A DNA stretch of 62,911 bases, the filler included, from Octopus bimaculoides (taxonomy: Eukaryota): NCBI RefSeq assembly GCF_001194135.2. It is 5 parts of 5 records of this genome, joined end to end, with 100 filler letters (N's around TTAATTAATTAA, not from the genome) between each part and the next. Parts side by side here need not be neighbours in the genome. Positions count along the whole stretch, not along the records: positions 51,625 to 61,413 come from NC_068984.1; 4 more parts are not named here. One strand, written 5' to 3'. The number at the start of each line of letters is the position of its first letter. Position 1 is the first letter of the stretch. This document shows, piece after piece, positions 55,148 to 61,413 of the stretch. A program made the position numbers and the translations under genes. The notes under the pieces are model-generated. The model did not search any database. It was not told the origin of the DNA and saw nothing but the letters and a program-made list of their open reading frames with translations.

Positions 55148-55215
55148 CTTTGCAGCCCAGTTGATTAACCAAGTTGGTATCATGCCTTTCGGATCATCAT
55201 AATATTGCATGAAAA
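55148..55215 (-). CDS. PCTP: PCTP penultimate exon: (V)FMQYYDDPKGMIPTWLINWAAK
   Basis: 68-nt exon with acceptor TTTTAG and donor AAG|GTTTGT (phase 1 to 0). Near-identical to the PCTP motif VFMYYFDNPGGQIPSWLINWAAK and much closer to PCTP than to STARD7/10. Confidence 0.95.
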
Positions 55216-56083
55216 CTAAAATAGAAGAGAGATATTACGAAACAAAAGAAATTAGCAACATAAAACATAATAGCCAACCGGCAAATAGAATAAATGTCAA
55301 TCCTAATGACATGGATGATGGTGTGGAGCTGGGAAGTGGTCAGTGCTAGTGTGTGCGTGGTGATGTGATGTGGTGTTGTATAGTATGGTGGTGTGGTGTA
55401 GTGGTGTGTGGTGTGGTGTGGTGTGGTGTGGTGGTGCTGGGATGTAGGGGAGGTGAGAGNNNNNNNNNNNNNNNNNNNNNNNNNNNNNNNNNNNNNNNNN
55501 NNNNNNNNNNNNNNNNNNNNNNNNNNNNNNNNNNNNNNNNNNNNNNNNNNNNNNNNNNNNNNNNNNNNNNNNNNNNNNNNNNNNNNNNNNNNNNNNNNNN
55601 NNNNNNNNNNNNNNNNNNNNNNNNNNNNNNNNNNNNNNNNNNNNNNNNNNNNNNNNNNNNNNNNNNNNNNNNNNNNNNNNNNNNNNNNNNNNNNNNNNNN
55701 NNNNNNNNNNNNNNNNNNNNNNNNNNNNNNNNNNNNNNNNNNNNNNNNNNNNNNNNNNNNNNNNNNNNNNNNNNNNNNNNNNNNNNNNNNNNNNNNNNNN
55801 NNNNNNNNNNNNNNNNNNNNNNNNNNNNNNNNNNNNNNNNNNNNNNNNNNNNNNNNNNNNNNNNNNNNNNNNNNNNNNNNNNNNNNNNNNNNNNNNNNNN
55901 NNNNNNNNNNNNNNNNNNNNNNNNNNNNNNNNNNNNNNNNNNNNNNNNNNNNNNNNNNNNNTTTATATACATACATGCAGGTTGCGGTGAATAAACTGTT
56001 GTCTAAATTATGTATAAATGAAAATAACACTGATATCTCATTCTAACAGATATATTTACCAAAATTACATAAAAATATCTTGA

Positions 56084-56800
56084 AATACTAAAGCGTAAAT
56101 TTTTTGAATAAAATCGCCATGGGCTTCAACCACGGCCTCCAGATGACTAGAATCTCCTGCAACTTTTCTGGTCAGTTTCCTTGTTTAAGTTGGTGAATGC
56201 TGCCATAATTCTTGCCTTCAGTTCATCTTTGTTGGTACAAGGAATTTTGTTGGACTCTCACTCAACTGTGCTCCACACATAATAATCAAGGAGTTTGCAG
56301 TCTGGGGAGTTGGGTTGCCAGATTTTAGGGGTGGTATGGTCGCAGAAATTGTCTGACAGCCATGACTGGGTTCTCCTGCTCTGTGGCATGGTGCAGAGTC
56401 CTGTTGTCTGACGTAGGGTCTTCCAGCAGCCACCCTCTTGACCCAGGGCAGCACTACCTCCTCCAGATACTTGATGTAGGCCTCCATGTTGAGTCTGAGG
56501 CTATGTGGGAAGATGAATGGAGGAATAATATTGCCATCACTAGTGATCACTCGAAACACCATGATGTTGACTGAATGCTTGATTTTTATCACTCTCAGTA
56601 CATGTCCTCAGATTGACACCCAAACACTTTGAAATGTTTGTATGGGAACTTATGGCATGAATTCCAAGCAGCACAGCTTGTTGTTTCCAAATTTCTGGGA
56701 GAATGAATTGCATTATGGTACTGTTTTTCTCAGACGGTGTGCATCTGACCCTACTATACTGTGTAGTTGGCAGAATGAAAACAAACAATGTGCATACACA
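56084..56800 (-). mobile_element. Mariner-like (DD37D-like) transposase relic in a PCTP intron
   Basis: KHSVNIMVF.VITSDG..IPPFIF, QQDSAPCH, WQPNSPDCKLLDYYVW. Confidence 0.8.
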
Positions 56801-56847
56801 AAATAAAAAAAATTTATAGTGACAATTTACCCATCACACCCTGTATG

Positions 56848-56884
<37 letters not shown>

Positions 56885-57465
56885 NNNNNNNNNNNNNNNN
56901 NNNNNNNNNNNNNNNNNNNNNNNNNNNNNNNNNNNNNNNNNNNNNNNNNNNNNNNNNNNNNNNNNNNNNNNNNNNNNNNNNNNNNNNNNNNNNNNNNNNN
57001 NNNNNNNNNNNNNNNNNNNNNNNNNNNNNNNNNNNNNNNNNNNNNNNNNNNNNNNNNNNNNNNNNNNNNNNNNNNNNNNNNNNNNNNNNNNNNNNNNNNN
57101 NNNNNNNNNNNNNNNNNNNNNNNNNNNNNNNNNNNNNNNNNNNNNNNNNNNNNNNNNNNNNNNNNNNNNNNNNNNNNNNNNNNNNNNNNNNNNNNNNNNN
57201 NNNNNNNNNNNNNNNNNNNNNNNNNNNNNNNNNNNNNNNNNNNNNNNNNNNNNNNNNNNNNNNNNNNNNNNNNNNNNNNNNNNNNNNNNNNNNNNNNNNN
57301 NNNNNNNNNNNNNNNNNNNNNNNNNNNNNNNNNNNNNNNNNNNNNNNNNNNNNNNNNNNNNNNNNNNNNNNNNNNNNNNNNNNNNNNNNNNNNNNNNNNN
57401 NNNNNNNNNNNNNNNNNNNNNNNNNNNNNNNNNNNNNNNNNNNNNNNNNNNTATATATATATGTA

Positions 57466-58172
57466 TATAGCAATAAGAAAATGGAGGAGAATATGCGGTA
57501 TCCATCGACTTGCAGACAGTGTATTCCGTTGATTAATTTGTTTACTTTACAACTAAAATGACAAAAACCACAATATACAGATGCTTATGACATACCATGT
57601 CATATTAACAATTAAGGTTACAAATATAAAGTACATTTAGCAATTGGAGAATATATAGGAACTTACAGCCATTTCGGCCTAGCGTTGGCATGCCCCATTC
57701 TATCTCTATAGCTCCTGTGCGCCGGAGTAATTAGCAGATGAAAATGATGTAATGGGGGTACATGCATGATTCGCTAGGCCTCTTCAGAGATTCACAAAAT
57801 TTAATACAAATATAAAATAAAAGATAAAAATAAAAATAAGAATAAAGTAAAAATAAAAATAAATGAAAAATGAAAATATAAAAATATAAGGCACATAAAA
57901 AGCCTACAAACAGTATATAAGACCATATAAACAGTTTTAAACACTCCAATACACATGCCTGTGCCTGTGTACATAACCATACGTAGATATCTATGGGTAC
58001 AAAAGCATAGATAGATGTGTACATATGTGTGCCCAGATGTACGTCAACAGTCACTGCCACCACATGTGAGGGGGAAATATACATACATATATATATATAT
58101 ATATATATCCCCTCACACTGTCTGCAAGTCGATAGATACCGCATATTCTCCTCCATTTTCTTATTGCTATAT
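57466..58172 (-). mobile_element. PLE-like hammerhead repeat bounded by near-perfect ~57-bp inverted repeats
   Basis: 57466-57522 and 58115-58172 are reverse complements with one mismatch. The hammerhead lies at 57658-57793. Confidence 0.65.
57658..57793 (-). ncRNA. Type I hammerhead ribozyme in a PCTP intron, sense to the pre-mRNA
   Basis: Minus strand reads GAATCT-CTGAAGA-GGCCTAGCG-(87 nt, partly self-pairing GCATG..CCCCATT/AATGGGGCATGC)-CGCTAGGCC-GAAA-T-GGCT-G-TA^AGTTCC. Core intact, stem II 9 bp, stem I 5 bp with one bulge, stem III loop diverged from CAGCTG. Confidence 0.8.
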
Positions 58173-59089
58173 AAATTTAGGGTAAAATAACCCCCCTTTT
58201 ACCCACACCCACTTATTGCACTTGGTATAACACTAGTGTAACAATAATTGGGTACTCTCCCAGCAGTATATTGGATAGATACTATCCCTTAGTGGGTTGA
58301 ATACTCAACCCCTAACTCTCTTGCATTATATATATACATATATATATTTTTATATACACTACATACACACACACATACAGAAAACATAACAGGCTTCCAT
58401 GTAGTTTCCGTCTACAAAATCCATTCACAAGACTCTGGTTGGCCCAGGGCTATAATAGAAGAGACTTCAAGGCAATATATTGCACAATTAGATATAAGTA
58501 TAAAAAATAAATTATGGGGACATAAAAGCTTTTAGTCTGAGACACCACCATCTCAGCTGTATCCACTTATACAGAATATCACAGTATTTACAAAAATTAC
58601 ATGCTATCTCGAATATAATGCATCCTGTTACATTTAAGTGTATCCAAAACTCAGTAATATATTCTATCCCCTTTTATTCATACTTTTTTAAAATCTTGAG
58701 TGTAATGCAAGTAACCAATTCTGATTGTGATGTTTTGTATTAACTTTCTAGTATTACACACATTCATAGTGAAACCAACAAATTACTATATTTGAATACT
58801 GCTGTCATTCTACTGACAGAAGGTAGTGTTCAATAACCAATAATCAACTGAAATGATGATAGAACTTTGTAATTTGACAGTTTTCACCAGAATTTGTGAA
58901 ACATGAGAACACTTTTAGTATGTCAGAAATCAATTTATGGATCATTTGTTTGTCATAAAATAATCATCAAGCTGACAGGTGACACACATAAAATAAGCAA
59001 TATTCCAAATGTATTTTAGTTTCTAAGAGTTGGAATTGCCATTTTTCTTTTATATCTTTTTGTCAGAAGGGAAGCCTGTGTCCACGAAT

Positions 59090-60240
59090 CTTTATGAGGC
59101 CTCTGAGACAGGTGAAAAGGAGAGAGGGAGAAACCTCTGAATTTTCCAGAGATATGCAGGGTTGACTGTGTCAGATGTCACCTTGAGGTTGACAAAGATG
59201 ATGTAAAGGTGGCGATCTTTGTGGAACTCCCAAAATCTTTCAATAATGAGATGAAGGGCAAAAATATGGTTGGTGGTAGATTGATTTGGCAAGAATTTGG
59301 CTTGTTGTGGGCGGCAACTGCTTCTGATGGTGGAAAGAGCATGGTTGAGGAGGATCCTAGTGAAGAGCTTGCCTGGGATGGAGAAGAGGGTGATGCCCCT
59401 GTGGTTGCTGCTGAGTTTGTTGCCCTTCTGTTCCCAGAAAAGGAGGACAATACCTGGGTACAGTCATTTGGGAGCTGCTCTGACACCCATACACAGTTAG
59501 TGATGCAAGTGAGCCACTGGACCATGTTATCTCTGTCCACCTTCAACATTACCACAGAAAAAGTGCAGGTTCCAGGGGCTTTGCAGTCATTGAGCTTCTT
59601 CAGGGCAGCAGTCTTCAGTGGGGTGACAGGATCAAGTCTGCAAGTGTTGTTGGTTGCAGCTGAATGTGCAGTGATGATACGGCTGGGATCAATTGGGACA
59701 GGTGGGTGAAGAAGAAGAAGACTGAAGTGCTCCTTCCAGAGTTTAAGGTGGTCGGTTTCCATAGTGATGATGTTGCCATTGGTATCCTTCACCAGGGGCT
59801 GTCGTGAACTAAGGACTGGCATGGGCTCTGTGGAGTATGTTGAACACCTGGCTGAGGTTATTGTCGTTGCTTCCAGGTGCTCAGCTTCCTCCACCCGGAA
59901 CTTCTCTCAGTCATCTGTAATGACCTTGTTGCATATCCCATTGAGTCAACAGTACTCATGTCACTGTGCAGATGAGCCTTGTTATGACAGTTGAAGTTGA
60001 TTATCCCAACATCTGTAGTGAAATCCAGGATCACTTGGGAAGAGGTCTTGAGTTTACTGAGACATCACATGCAAACTGGTTGATGCTCAATTTGAAGACC
60101 TCCTAGTTATCAATCTCATCCTGAAACAATTGATAATAGAGAATGCAAATGCTGAGGCAATATTGGAATTGCAGAAATAGGATGAGTCTGGGTGGGGCTG
60201 GTACTGGTGGCAGGGTCCACCAATGACTTCAAGTTGTTAG
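59090..60240 (-). mobile_element. RTE-clade LINE relic in a PCTP intron
   Basis: WKEHFSLLL, KAPG, HRGITLFSIPGKLFTRIL, STTNHIFALHLIIE, YIIFVNLK..DTV. Confidence 0.85.
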
Positions 60241-60487
60241 TACTGCATATATTTTCTTAATCACCCTATTTAGTCATACTGTGATTAGTGTGGTTATTTC
60301 CAATGTTGAAGTACATACCACAATGTATCACATGTTAAAATATGGATGACAATTTGTGACATAAACTATCATCTTATTCTATGACTTGTATCTTATCAAT
60401 AAATTATAATTTCCTATATTTATAGCTGTAAAACAATTATTCCATATTATTTGGTAAATAGAAAAAGAAAATAAGAAAGTGAATTAC

Positions 60488-60662
60488 CTTTTGTACCTCC
60501 TTCTGGTTGTTTACTAATTACCAAACTTTGGTAGTAATCATCTACTCTGACTGTCATCCATTTCTCAGGGAAATTTGTTACTTCATCAACACTTTGAGCA
60601 ATGATCACATATACTTTGGCTCCTTTCCAGTCAATAATGCGTAGCTCTCTCTTATACACATA
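60488..60662 (-). CDS. PCTP: Phosphatidylcholine transfer protein (START domain), internal exon: YVYKRELRIIDWKGAKVYVIIAQSVDEVTNFPEKWMTVRVDDYYQSLVISKQPEGGTK
   Basis: 175-nt open exon with acceptor TTCAG and donor AAG|GTAATT (phase 0 to 1). The peptide resembles vertebrate PCTP (YVY..R.....G.K.HVILA.S......E....IRV..Y.QSL.I.....GSK). It splices in frame to the next two exons. Upstream exons lie outside the window. Confidence 0.93.
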
Positions 60663-60787: not shown

Positions 60788-60994
60788 AATATAAATACAC
60801 ACACACACACATATATATATAGACAAACAGACAGATAGATAGACAAAGAACAGAAAGTGGAATTAATGAGCTTACATTATTTTATCAACACTGAAAGGAT
60901 GAAAGCTAATTCAATCTCGACAGAACTTGAACTCAGATTGTAAGAGCTTTAGGAAATGTGGCTAAGTATGTTTTCTGACATGCTAATGATTCTG

Positions 60995-61413
60995 CCAGGC
61001 TTGCCGCATTCATGTATAATGATAATAACAACAGTAATAATAATACATAATATATACGTGGAAGACAATTGGAGATTTCTGCGGGACAACCTGTTGAGAG
61101 CCACAGACCAGATCTGTGGCTGGTGTAAAGTCCCCTCTCGACCCAGAGTAACGTGGTGGTGGAACAAGGATGTAGACGGGGCTATTACACAAAAGAAACA
61201 GGCTTGGAAGGACTGGAAGAATGGTGGTAGCAGGGAATTGTACCAATCTGCCAGAAGGGAAGCTAGGCGACAGGTTTATTTAGCCAGAGGGGAAGCAGAT
61301 AAGAAAAGATTTGCCAATGTTCTGCGCCGTGAGGACCAAAGACTCGAGGTATTTCGTGTTGCAAGACAGTGTAGGAGAGAGAATAGTGATGTTGTAGGAG
61401 AGAAATGTGTTCG
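60995..61413 (+). mobile_element. RTE-clade LINE fragment (APE-RT linker region)
   Basis: WRFLRDNLLRATDQICGW...TWWWNKDV.AI..KKQAWKDWK; ends at a gap. Confidence 0.8.

What the first reader, a model, noticed from the sequence alone, without database searches (positions are those of the whole stretch)
57658..57793. Hammerhead ribozyme in sense orientation inside a PCTP intron
Seen: an intact core on the minus strand within the 5.3-kb intron (55216-60487), so it is transcribed with every PCTP pre-mRNA. Stem II is perfect and extended, but the stem III palindrome has changed from the CAGCTG seen elsewhere to TGGCTG. Inference: either attenuation of a harmful self-cleaver by loss of dimerisation, or a conditional switch in which cleavage competes with splicing. 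A-to-I editing or a trans partner RNA could tune it.
Basis: partly seen in the sequence, partly recalled or inferred. Interest (0 to 1): 0.75.

Follow-up and report, generated by a model that had tools for sequence, protein, structure and literature searches.

The report
Solo retroelement hammerhead in PCTP intron
A real hammerhead-ribozyme motif sits in the sense strand of an intron of the octopus PCTP gene, but it looks like a single stranded copy of a mobile-element ribozyme that needs a partner to cut, so it is most likely a harmless passenger, not a gene switch.

Summary
On the minus strand, 57793-57658 reads GAAUCU-CUGAAGA-[9-bp perfect helix II + 87-nt structured extension]-GAA-A-UGGCUG-U-A|AGUUCC. 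Every invariant hammerhead core base is present, with G10.1-C11.1 and a GUA cleavage triplet (cut predicted between 57664 and 57663). It lies in the sense strand of the intron 55216-60487, between two exons that match human PCTP (E 8e-19). Chance is excluded (about 1e-3 x 5e-4 per piece). No Rfam model detects it.

The regulatory interpretation has no support. The motif is a type I hammerhead of the metazoan Penelope-like/retrozyme class, with a long helix II, a short bulged helix I and a rudimentary helix III. Published members of this class cut only as dimers. Only one copy exists in the assembled 9.8 kb. UGGCUG still self-pairs through G-U wobbles (-4.7 versus -11.1 kcal/mol for CAGCUG), so dimerisation is weakened, not lost. 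The monomer's active fold is 5.4 kcal/mol above its MFE.

A 15-nt direct repeat brackets a 171-nt unit (p about 0.005), which suggests a solo retrozyme-like insertion. No other copies or orthologous introns could be fetched. Verdict: an ordinary transposable-element relic and a new member of a known kind.

The parts
57634..57804 (-). 171-nt unit that holds the whole hammerhead and is bracketed by a 15-nt direct repeat. Candidate single-unit retroelement insertion, 43% G+C.
57805..57819 (-). Upstream copy of the direct repeat, TATTTTATATTTGTA (putative target-site duplication).
   Evidence: p = 0.005 against composition-matched shuffles of the 80-nt flanks
57619..57633 (-). Downstream copy of the direct repeat, TACTTTATATTTGTA.
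57788..57793 (-). Helix I 5' strand, GAAUCU. It forms 5 bp with AGUUC if U57790 bulges.
57781..57787 (-). Catalytic core box C3-A9, CUGAAGA.
57772..57780 (-). Helix II 5' strand, GGCCUAGCG (G10.1 first).
57685..57771 (-). 87-nt extension of helix II that folds back on itself. The whole 105-nt hairpin has MFE -39.3 kcal/mol, z = -4.1; the insert alone has z = -1.7.
57676..57684 (-). Helix II 3' strand, CGCUAGGCC (C11.1 last).
57672..57675 (-). Core G12 A13 A14 plus A15.1.
57664..57671 (-). Rudimentary helix III: UGGCUG, then U16.1 (57665) and H17 = A (57664). The predicted cut is between 57664 and 57663.
57658..57663 (-). Helix I 3' strand, AGUUCC.
55216..60487 (-). PCTP intron that carries the element. 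It includes the N gaps 55460-55961 and 56885-57451.
60488..60662 (-). Upstream PCTP (START-domain) exon.
55148..55215 (-). Downstream PCTP exon.

Best explanation
This is a solo, retroelement-derived type I hammerhead motif of the metazoan Penelope-like-element / non-LTR-retrozyme class.

How it got there (inferred): most likely a single 171-bp unit (57804-57634, minus strand) was retro-inserted into an AT-rich stretch of the PCTP intron. The insertion left a 15-bp target-site duplication.

What is shown directly: because the motif lies on the sense strand, it is copied into every pre-mRNA that reads through the intron.

What it does (inferred):
- Ribozymes of this class have almost no helix III. 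They become active only when two copies pair their self-complementary loop 3 into a shared extended helix III.
- This copy has no partner in the assembled sequence.
- Its helix III is two weak pairs (A-U, U-G) on a GGCU loop.
- Its helix I is 5 bp with a bulge.
- No loop-loop tertiary contact is evident.
- As a monomer it should therefore cut very slowly or not at all, too slowly to compete with removal of an intron whose 3' splice site is about 2.4 kb downstream in this assembly.

Conclusion: it is a neutral passenger in the intron, not a regulator of PCTP.
For: 1. Complete core, G10.1-C11.1 and a GUA triplet. Not chance.
2. The architecture matches the published PLE-type minimal hammerheads. 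[quoted passage not shown] Here helix II is 9 bp, helix I is 5 bp, and loop 3 is self-complementary through G-U pairs.
3. Single motifs of this class showed no detectable cleavage, and dimers only low activity (PMC4209133; PMC6765202). Axolotl retrozyme hammerheads with a similar 1-2 bp helix III cut well only as dimers (PMC7229834).
4. Only one copy exists in the piece, even allowing 3 mismatches.
5. The hammerhead-compatible monomer fold is -35.5 kcal/mol against an MFE of -40.9.
6. A 15-nt direct repeat brackets a 171-nt, 43% G+C unit. Metazoan retrozymes are about 170-400 nt, below 50% G+C, with TSDs longer than 4 bp (PMC7229834).
7. Octopus genomes hold active Penelope-like families (PMC13282606), and the giant squid has 235 Rfam Hammerhead_1 hits (PMC6962438).
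8. In Xenopus, 42-44% of retrozyme copies lie in introns, and monomers are spread evenly along chromosomes (bioRxiv 10.64898/2026.07.22.740005). Intronic solo copies are therefore commonplace.
9. Slow intronic ribozymes do not affect splicing.
10. The surrounding intron is a mosaic of other transposon debris.
Against: - No second copy of this family could be obtained, so family membership, the consensus loop 3 and the unit boundaries rest on one sequence.
- The 15-nt repeat lies at the edge of an A/T-rich array. It was found post hoc, and a rival repeat pair exists.
- No PLE reading frame lies next to it.
- The 87-nt helix II extension is unlike described retrozyme or PLE hammerheads. The extra nucleotide between A9 and G10.1 that is typical of PLE motifs is absent.
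- A 567-N assembly gap begins 207 nt downstream and could hide a tandem partner.
- Trans-dimerisation with transcripts of other family members is not excluded.
- Activity was not measured.
Confidence: 0.75

Rival explanations
1. One reading: a functional intronic ribozyme. Either a once-harmful self-cleaver was attenuated by the CAGCUG-to-UGGCUG change, or it is a conditional switch. In the switch version, cleavage (tuned by a trans partner RNA, A-to-I editing or U1 binding) competes with splicing and sets PCTP mRNA output, as the CPEB3 ribozyme does.
For: - Sense orientation and an intact core.
- A heterodimer with a CAGCUG-type partner is still fairly stable at -7.9 kcal/mol.
- There is precedent for intronic ribozymes that affect mRNA yield (CPEB3, PMC10919898) and for domesticated intronic hammerheads in amniotes (PMC6155905).
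- A perfect GUAAGU straddles the cleavage site, so U1 snRNP could in principle mask it.
Against: - There is no conservation, expression or cleavage data.
- The class is nearly inactive as a monomer.
- The monomer's active fold is disfavoured.
- A single orientation is a coin flip.
- The two substitutions are no more pairing-preserving than expected for transitions.
- The domesticated amniote examples have stable canonical folds with tertiary contacts, which are absent here.
Confidence: 0.06
2. The carrier is not a 171-bp unit. It is the 3' non-coding end (pLTR) of a 5'-truncated Penelope-like element on the minus strand, running from about 58076 to at least 57458. A short inverted 5'-truncated copy sits next to it (58115-58179 and beyond, plus strand). 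Both were inserted into a (TA)n microsatellite.
For: - Two 62-65-nt arms, 95% complementary, at 57458-57522 and 58115-58179, each abutting (TA)n.
- An assembly gap lies inside the (TA)n tract.
- PLE insertions typically show an inverted 5'-truncated copy that forms inverted repeats, a bias towards microsatellites including (TA)n, and assembly problems (PMC8557442).
- Hammerheads lie in PLE pLTRs.
Against: - No RT or GIY-YIG remnant is detectable.
- The arms share only about 62 nt and then diverge.
- (TA)n targeting is documented for Naiads, which lack canonical hammerheads.
- The arms could equally be the terminal inverted repeats of a MITE, or an unrelated fold-back repeat.
Confidence: 0.2
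3. The element is a plus-strand, A-tailed SINE-like retroposon: a body at about 57637-57802 and an (AATAAA)n tail at 57803-57889. The hammerhead motif would then lie on its antisense strand and be incidental to its mobility.
For: - An A-rich array abuts the unit on the plus strand.
- A second candidate repeat pair, 57619-57636 / 57879-57896 (15/18), would bracket body plus tail.
Against: - A complete hammerhead with a 9-bp helix II on the 'wrong' strand of a SINE would be an extreme coincidence.
- No tRNA-like head was found.
- The 15/18 repeat is weaker than the 14/15 pair and lies inside low-complexity sequence.
Confidence: 0.05
4. A chance resemblance with no ribozyme ancestry.
For: No Rfam hammerhead model reports it. 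Folding of the 171-nt region as a whole is not exceptional (z = -0.42).
Against: The joint probability of core, 9-bp helix II, loop 3, U16.1/H17 and helix I is about 5e-7 per piece. The Rfam miss is explained by the 87-nt insert and the missing helix III.
Confidence: 0.01

Closest known systems
Minimal hammerheads of Penelope-like elements (Cervera & de la Pena 2014, PMC4209133; Lunse, Weinberg & Breaker 2017, cited in PMC6765202)
   Same: Type I topology, full core, G10.1-C11.1, long helix II, short helix I, almost no helix III with a self-complementary 15.2-16.2 stretch, and dimer-dependent activity expected. Mostly found as dispersed solo copies from truncated elements.
   Different: There is no unpaired nucleotide between A9 and G10.1. 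Helix II carries an 87-nt structured extension. No PLE reading frame or second pLTR is nearby. Loop 3 self-pairs only through G-U wobbles.
Metazoan non-LTR retrozymes (Cervera & de la Pena 2020, PMC7229834; Li et al. 2026 preprint 10.64898/2026.07.22.740005)
   Same: Small (about 170-400 nt), low-G+C, non-coding units with a type I hammerhead whose helix III is a 1-2 bp stem on a palindromic tetraloop. TSDs are longer than 4 bp. Monomer derivatives are scattered through the genome, many of them in introns.
   Different: Retrozymes are defined by head-to-tail tandem repeats and by a canonical 4-bp helix II with loop 1/loop 2 contacts. Here there is one unit only, a 9-bp helix II with a long extension, and no evident tertiary contact.
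Amniote intronic hammerheads HH9/HH10 (RECK, CTCL/C10orf118, DTNB; reviewed in PMC6155905)
   Same: A type I hammerhead inside an intron of a protein-coding gene, thought to derive from retroelement hammerheads.
   Different: Those are ultraconserved across birds and mammals and fold as stable, active monomers with tertiary contacts. Here there is no conservation evidence, and the monomer fold is weak.
CPEB3 intronic HDV-like ribozyme (PMC10919898)
   Different: A different ribozyme fold, conserved in mammals, with a measured half-life of about 2-3 min matched to polymerase transit. None of this is known for the octopus motif.
Sm-alpha / Sj-alpha SINE-like hammerhead elements of schistosomes, and the discontinuous Clec2 hammerhead
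   Same: Sm-alpha is a short non-autonomous retroposon that carries a type I hammerhead. Clec2 shows that a hammerhead can tolerate a very large insertion in one helix.
   Different: Sm-alpha hammerheads are canonical, fast monomers. The Clec2 insertion is in helix I of a type III motif in a 3' UTR, not in helix II.

Membership tests
Hammerhead ribozyme (class) | Core box C3 U4 G5 A6 N7 G8 A9 | tested here: met
   CUGAAGA at 57787-57781, minus strand.
Hammerhead ribozyme (class) | G12 A13 A14 followed by the A15.1-U16.1 pair and an N-U-H cleavage triplet | tested here: met
   GAAA at 57675-57672, U16.1 at 57665, H17 = A at 57664, triplet GUA.
Hammerhead ribozyme (class) | Helix II closed by G10.1-C11.1 directly on the core | tested here: met
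   9 perfect Watson-Crick pairs, 57780-57772 with 57684-57676.
Hammerhead ribozyme (class) | Helix I formed by the sequences 5' of C3 and 3' of the cleavage site | tested here: met
   5 bp with one bulged U (GAA-U-CU / AGUUC), or 4/6 in the ungapped register. This is weak.
Hammerhead ribozyme (class) | Helix III | tested here: inconclusive
   The monomer has only A-U plus U-G on a GGCU loop. An 8-bp intermolecular helix is possible at -4.7 kcal/mol.
Hammerhead ribozyme (class) | Recognised by the Rfam hammerhead covariance models (a proxy, not a definition) | tested here: not met
   No hammerhead family matched at E <= 1 on the piece or at E <= 10 on 57560-57900. The likely reasons are the 87-nt insert and the missing helix III.
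Hammerhead ribozyme (class) | Site-specific self-cleavage | not testable with these tools
   Needs in vitro transcription or RNA end mapping.
PLE-associated minimal hammerhead | Long helix II (6-8 bp) and short helix I (4-5 bp) | tested here: met
   9 bp and 5 bp, compared with PMC4209133.
PLE-associated minimal hammerhead | Unpaired nucleotide between A9 and G10.1 | tested here: not met
   A9 is followed directly by G10.1, which pairs with the C next to G12.
PLE-associated minimal hammerhead | Palindromic 15.2-16.2 / loop 3 that allows a dimer | tested here: inconclusive
   UGGCUG is self-complementary only with G-U wobbles. The duplex energy is -4.7 against -11.1 kcal/mol for CAGCUG.
PLE-associated minimal hammerhead | Located in a pLTR that flanks an RT / GIY-YIG reading frame | tested here: not met
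   No Pfam domain was found in any ORF of 57452-59900. The RT-like frame at 59400-59100 looks LINE-type and is not contiguous with the motif. A truncated solo copy is not excluded.
PLE-associated minimal hammerhead | Many-copy consensus families with covariation in the host genome | not testable with these tools
   No octopus genome is on hand. The metagenome, prokaryote-genome and viral scans gave only chance hits or none.
Metazoan non-LTR retrozyme | Unit of about 150-450 bp, G+C below 50%, non-coding, with a type I hammerhead | tested here: met
   171 nt and 43% G+C, compared with PMC7229834.
Metazoan non-LTR retrozyme | Head-to-tail tandem repeats (two or more units) | tested here: not met
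   One copy only in the assembled sequence. A 567-N gap starts 207 nt downstream.
Metazoan non-LTR retrozyme | Target-site duplication longer than 4 bp, when present | tested here: inconclusive
   A 15-nt direct repeat (14/15) brackets the unit, p = 0.005. It is in an AT-rich context, was found post hoc, and a rival pair exists.
Metazoan non-LTR retrozyme | Expressed as linear and circular RNA of unit length | not testable with these tools
   No transcriptome data.
Domesticated intronic hammerhead (HH9/HH10 type) | Sense orientation in an intron of a protein-coding gene | tested here: met
   Minus strand, the same strand as the PCTP exons.
Domesticated intronic hammerhead (HH9/HH10 type) | Conservation at the orthologous site across distant species | not testable with these tools
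   The protein database returned no octopus PCTP, so no orthologous intron could be fetched.
Domesticated intronic hammerhead (HH9/HH10 type) | Stable monomeric fold with helix I / helix II tertiary contacts | tested here: not met
   The active fold is 5.4 kcal/mol above the MFE, and helix III has 2 weak pairs.

The most novel reading that the evidence does not exclude
Octopuses may carry a so far undescribed hammerhead family whose helix II is a roughly 105-nt structured domain. Such a family would be invisible to the Rfam models and to the usual descriptors. Dispersed intronic sense copies such as this one would be cut in trans-dimers with abundant family transcripts. Alternatively, they would be gated by U1 snRNP binding to the GUAAGU that straddles the cleavage site, or by ADAR editing. 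Host pre-mRNAs such as PCTP would then be conditionally severed.
Probability: 0.04. Interest if true: 0.6.

Novelty: new member of a known kind. Interest (0 to 1): 0.2.

Why it matters
If the ordinary reading is right, the value is mainly in annotation. This is a bona fide hammerhead motif that the curated covariance models miss, because of an 87-nt extension of helix II and the lack of helix III. Hammerhead counts in cephalopod genomes based on Rfam therefore probably underestimate this class. It also gives a concrete seed (the 171-nt unit) for a genome-wide census in octopus. That census could link a retrozyme-like family to the active Penelope-like elements reported there. Only if the motif proved fast-cleaving or conserved would it bear on PCTP regulation.

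Tried and rejected
1. Rfam scans of the piece (E <= 1) and of 57560-57900 (E <= 10) found no hammerhead. They gave only weak microRNA-model hits on TA/TG hairpins and a 16.8-bit UnaL2 3'-element hit at 57627-57679 (E 1.9), which I judge to be chance.
2. I tried to fetch orthologous introns through the PCTP protein. The protein collection returned nothing for the joined exon peptide, so it seems to hold no octopus proteins.
3. An exact look-up of the 141-aa ORF that spans the motif found nothing on record.
4. Pattern scans for family members:
   - Metagenome contigs gave 3 hits (L001-L003). All are chance matches in GC-rich, bacterial-looking DNA with no CUGANGA upstream.
   - Prokaryote genome contigs and viral contigs gave none.
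5. A search for a second, degenerate copy in the piece, with up to 3 mismatches on either half, found none.
6. There is no tRNA-like SINE head.
7. There are no Pfam domains in the ORFs around the motif.
8. The supplement of Craig et al. 2021 with cephalopod PLE consensus sequences is not held. Lunse et al. 2017 and de la Pena & Garcia-Robles 2010 are not held either.
9. I considered building my own covariance model. I rejected this because, with one sequence and no trustworthy seed other than Rfam's, it would be circular.

Full report
**1. The observation**

On the minus strand, 57793 to 57658 reads GAAUCU-CUGAAGA-GGCCUAGCG-[87 nt]-CGCUAGGCC-GAA-A-UGGCUG-U-A|AGUUCC.

In hammerhead numbering:
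- C3-A9 is 57787-57781.
- Helix II is nine perfect Watson-Crick pairs that begin with G10.1-C11.1 (57780-57772 with 57684-57676).
- G12 A13 A14 A15.1 is 57675-57672.
- U16.1 is 57665 and H17 is A57664.

It is 5 bp if U57790 bulges.

The 87-nt insert is not a floppy loop. It continues helix II through GCAUG/CAUGC and CCCCAU/AUGGGG. The 105-nt hairpin folds at -39.3 kcal/mol (z = -4.1), and the insert alone has z = -1.7.

**2. Is it chance?**

A scan for CUGANGA, plus a stem II of at least 5 bp, plus GAAA found this one site in the piece on either strand. Only 2 of 2000 Markov-simulated pieces reached a 9-bp stem.

The further features are a self-complementary loop 3 (G-U allowed), U16.1, H17 and a helix I of at least 5 bp. 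Together they occur at 4.9e-4 in random sequence. The motif is not a coincidence.

No Rfam hammerhead model reports it, even at E <= 10 in a 341-nt search. I attribute this to the long insert and the near absence of helix III. This is an inference.

**3. Gene context**

- The ORF pieces at 60662-60488 and 55215-55148 (minus strand) join in frame across a GT (60487) ... AG (55216) intron.
- The joined 81-residue peptide matches the START domain (E 2.9e-11).
- In the PDB it matches only human phosphatidylcholine transfer protein (1LN1, E 8.4e-19).
- The motif is therefore in the sense strand of a PCTP intron.
- The intron's 5272 positions include 1069 N in two gaps. One gap (56885-57451) starts 207 nt downstream of the cleavage site.

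**4. What kind of hammerhead**

The topology is type I: helix I is open, and helices II and III are closed.

Helix III is only A15.1-U16.1 plus a U-G wobble on a GGCU loop. That is the hallmark of metazoan retroelement hammerheads:
- Canonical metazoan type I motifs have a 1-2 bp helix III capped by a small palindromic loop.
- Penelope-like-element (PLE) minimal hammerheads have a long helix II (7-8 bp), a short helix I (4-5 bp), a conserved G10.1-C11.1 and palindromic 15.2-16.2 (PMC4209133).
- These motifs work as dimers. Single copies gave no detectable cleavage and dimers only low activity (PMC6765202).
- Axolotl retrozyme hammerheads with a comparable helix III cut efficiently only as dimers (PMC7229834).

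Two features differ from the PLE consensus. There is no unpaired base between A9 and G10.1, and helix II is greatly extended.

**5. The loop 3 change**

Taking CAGCUG as the hypothetical ancestor, both differences are transitions that turn C-G into U-G and A-U into G-U. As RNA the stretch therefore still pairs with itself. The computed 8-bp duplex energies are:

| Pairing | Energy (kcal/mol) |
|---|---|
| native x native | -4.7 |
| native x CAGCUG | -7.9 |
| CAGCUG x CAGCUG | -11.1 |

Dimerisation is weakened, not lost.

By enumeration (mine), 15 of 135 possible two-site changes keep all pairs, and so do 6 of 15 two-transition changes. The pattern is therefore no evidence of selection.

As a monomer, the hammerhead-compatible fold is -35.5 kcal/mol against an MFE of -40.9.

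**6. The carrier**

The motif has no second copy in the piece, even at 3 mismatches per half. No ORF around it has a Pfam match.

*Candidate 171-nt unit.* A 15-nt direct repeat brackets exactly 171 nt (57804-57634) that hold the whole ribozyme. The copies are TATTTTATATTTGTA (57819-57805) and TACTTTATATTTGTA (57633-57619), minus strand. Composition-matched shuffles of the 80-nt flanks reach this length in 0.5% of trials. A 171-nt, 43% G+C, non-coding unit with a TSD longer than 4 bp sits at the lower edge of metazoan non-LTR retrozymes (about 170-400 nt, below 50% G+C; PMC7229834). Such retrozymes have recently been argued to be non-autonomous derivatives of PLE pLTRs (preprint 10.64898/2026.07.22.740005). 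I take a solo retrozyme-like unit as the most likely carrier. However, the repeat lies at the edge of an (AATAAA)n array, and a weaker alternative pair exists.

*Alternative: a PLE composite insertion.* Two 62-65-nt arms (57458-57522 and 58115-58179) are 95% complementary. Each lies next to (TA)n, and an assembly gap sits in the microsatellite. This recalls the inverted 5'-truncated copies, microsatellite targeting and assembly trouble described for PLE insertions (PMC8557442). Without other copies the two carriers cannot be separated.

*Background.* PLEs are active in Octopus vulgaris (PMC13282606). A squid genome has 235 Rfam Hammerhead_1 hits (PMC6962438).

**7. How it most likely works**

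- Shown: the motif is part of the pre-mRNA sense strand.
- Inferred from the class: without a partner, the rudimentary helix III and weak helix I keep the monomer essentially inactive.
- Inferred from Fong et al. 2009, as summarised in PMC10919898: only fast intronic ribozymes lower mRNA yield, and slow ones have no effect.
- The downstream 3' splice site is about 2.4 kb away in this assembly. That is roughly a minute of transcription at mammalian elongation rates, so only a ribozyme with k_obs near 1 per min could matter.
- In Xenopus, 42-44% of retrozyme-derived copies lie in introns despite a statistical depletion, so solo intronic copies are tolerated.

The parsimonious reading is a neutral passenger.

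**8. What remains open**

- A tandem partner could be hidden in the gap.
- Trans-dimers with other family transcripts are possible.
- Nothing was measured.
- I could not obtain any related sequence. The protein collection has no octopus PCTP, an exact look-up failed, and pattern scans of metagenomes, prokaryote genomes and viral contigs gave chance hits or none.

**9. Verdict**

The regulatory interpretation is not supported. This is a new member of a known kind: a dimer-type, retroelement-borne hammerhead with an unusual 87-nt helix II extension that makes it invisible to Rfam. Interest is low to modest.

Noticed in passing
window 57458-57522 and 58115-58179: Inverted repeat with 62-65-nt arms, 95% complementary and 592 nt apart, enclosing the hammerhead. 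Each arm abuts a (TA)n tract. In the pre-mRNA the arms could form a 59-bp duplex (-106 kcal/mol), which is a plausible ADAR substrate. The arms might be PLE-style inverted copies, MITE ends or a fold-back repeat.
   Followed up: partly
window 57661-57666 (minus strand), with the T-rich tract 57800-57900 upstream: A perfect 5' splice-site hexamer GUAAGU straddles the predicted cleavage site. It is the only GTRAGT on the sense strand of the assembled intron. Together with the upstream T-rich tract and the AGs at 57783/57781, it could define a 115- or 113-nt cryptic exon. That exon would shift the frame and bring a stop codon. The candidate 3' splice sites (AAG, GAG) are poor.
   Followed up: partly
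window 56885-57451 and 55460-55961: Two assembly gaps inside the intron. The first is flanked on both sides by (TA)n and begins 207 nt downstream of the cleavage site, so a tandem copy or a complex insertion could be hidden there. The second is next to a (GTG/TGG)n-rich tract at 55373-55436.
   Followed up: no
window 59095-59900 (minus strand): A frameshifted reverse-transcriptase-like remnant (…NHRGITLFSIPGK…FLPNQSTTNHIFAL…YIIFVNLKVTSDTV…) that looks LINE-type by eye and breaks off at about 59095. It has no Pfam hit at the thresholds used.
   Followed up: partly
window 56218-56592 (minus strand) and 60956-61413 (plus strand): An ORF with a Tc1/mariner-like DDE signature (…QQDSAPCH…), and a second LINE-like ORF that runs into the piece's edge. 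Both were judged by eye only and have no Pfam hit. The intron and its flank are a mosaic of transposon debris.
   Followed up: no
window 57627-57679 (minus strand): A weak match to the Rfam UnaL2 LINE 3' element (16.8 bits, E 1.9). It is driven by the CUGUAAGU and UGCUAAAUG blocks at the right spacing. Probably chance.
   Followed up: partly
window 58053-58129 and 58318-58380: Sub-threshold hits to several microRNA models (mir-297, mir-466 and others). They come from (TA)n/(TG)n hairpins such as GUGUGAGGGG(AU)nAUUUCCCCCUCACA. These are repeat artefacts, not microRNA genes.
   Followed up: no
window 58180-58326 (plus strand): The plus-strand arm continues for about 147 nt more, up to the next (TA)n at 58327-58356. 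The stretch 58115-58326 therefore looks like a 212-bp insertion between two (TA)n tracts. The minus-strand arm instead runs into (TA)n and the gap.
   Followed up: partly
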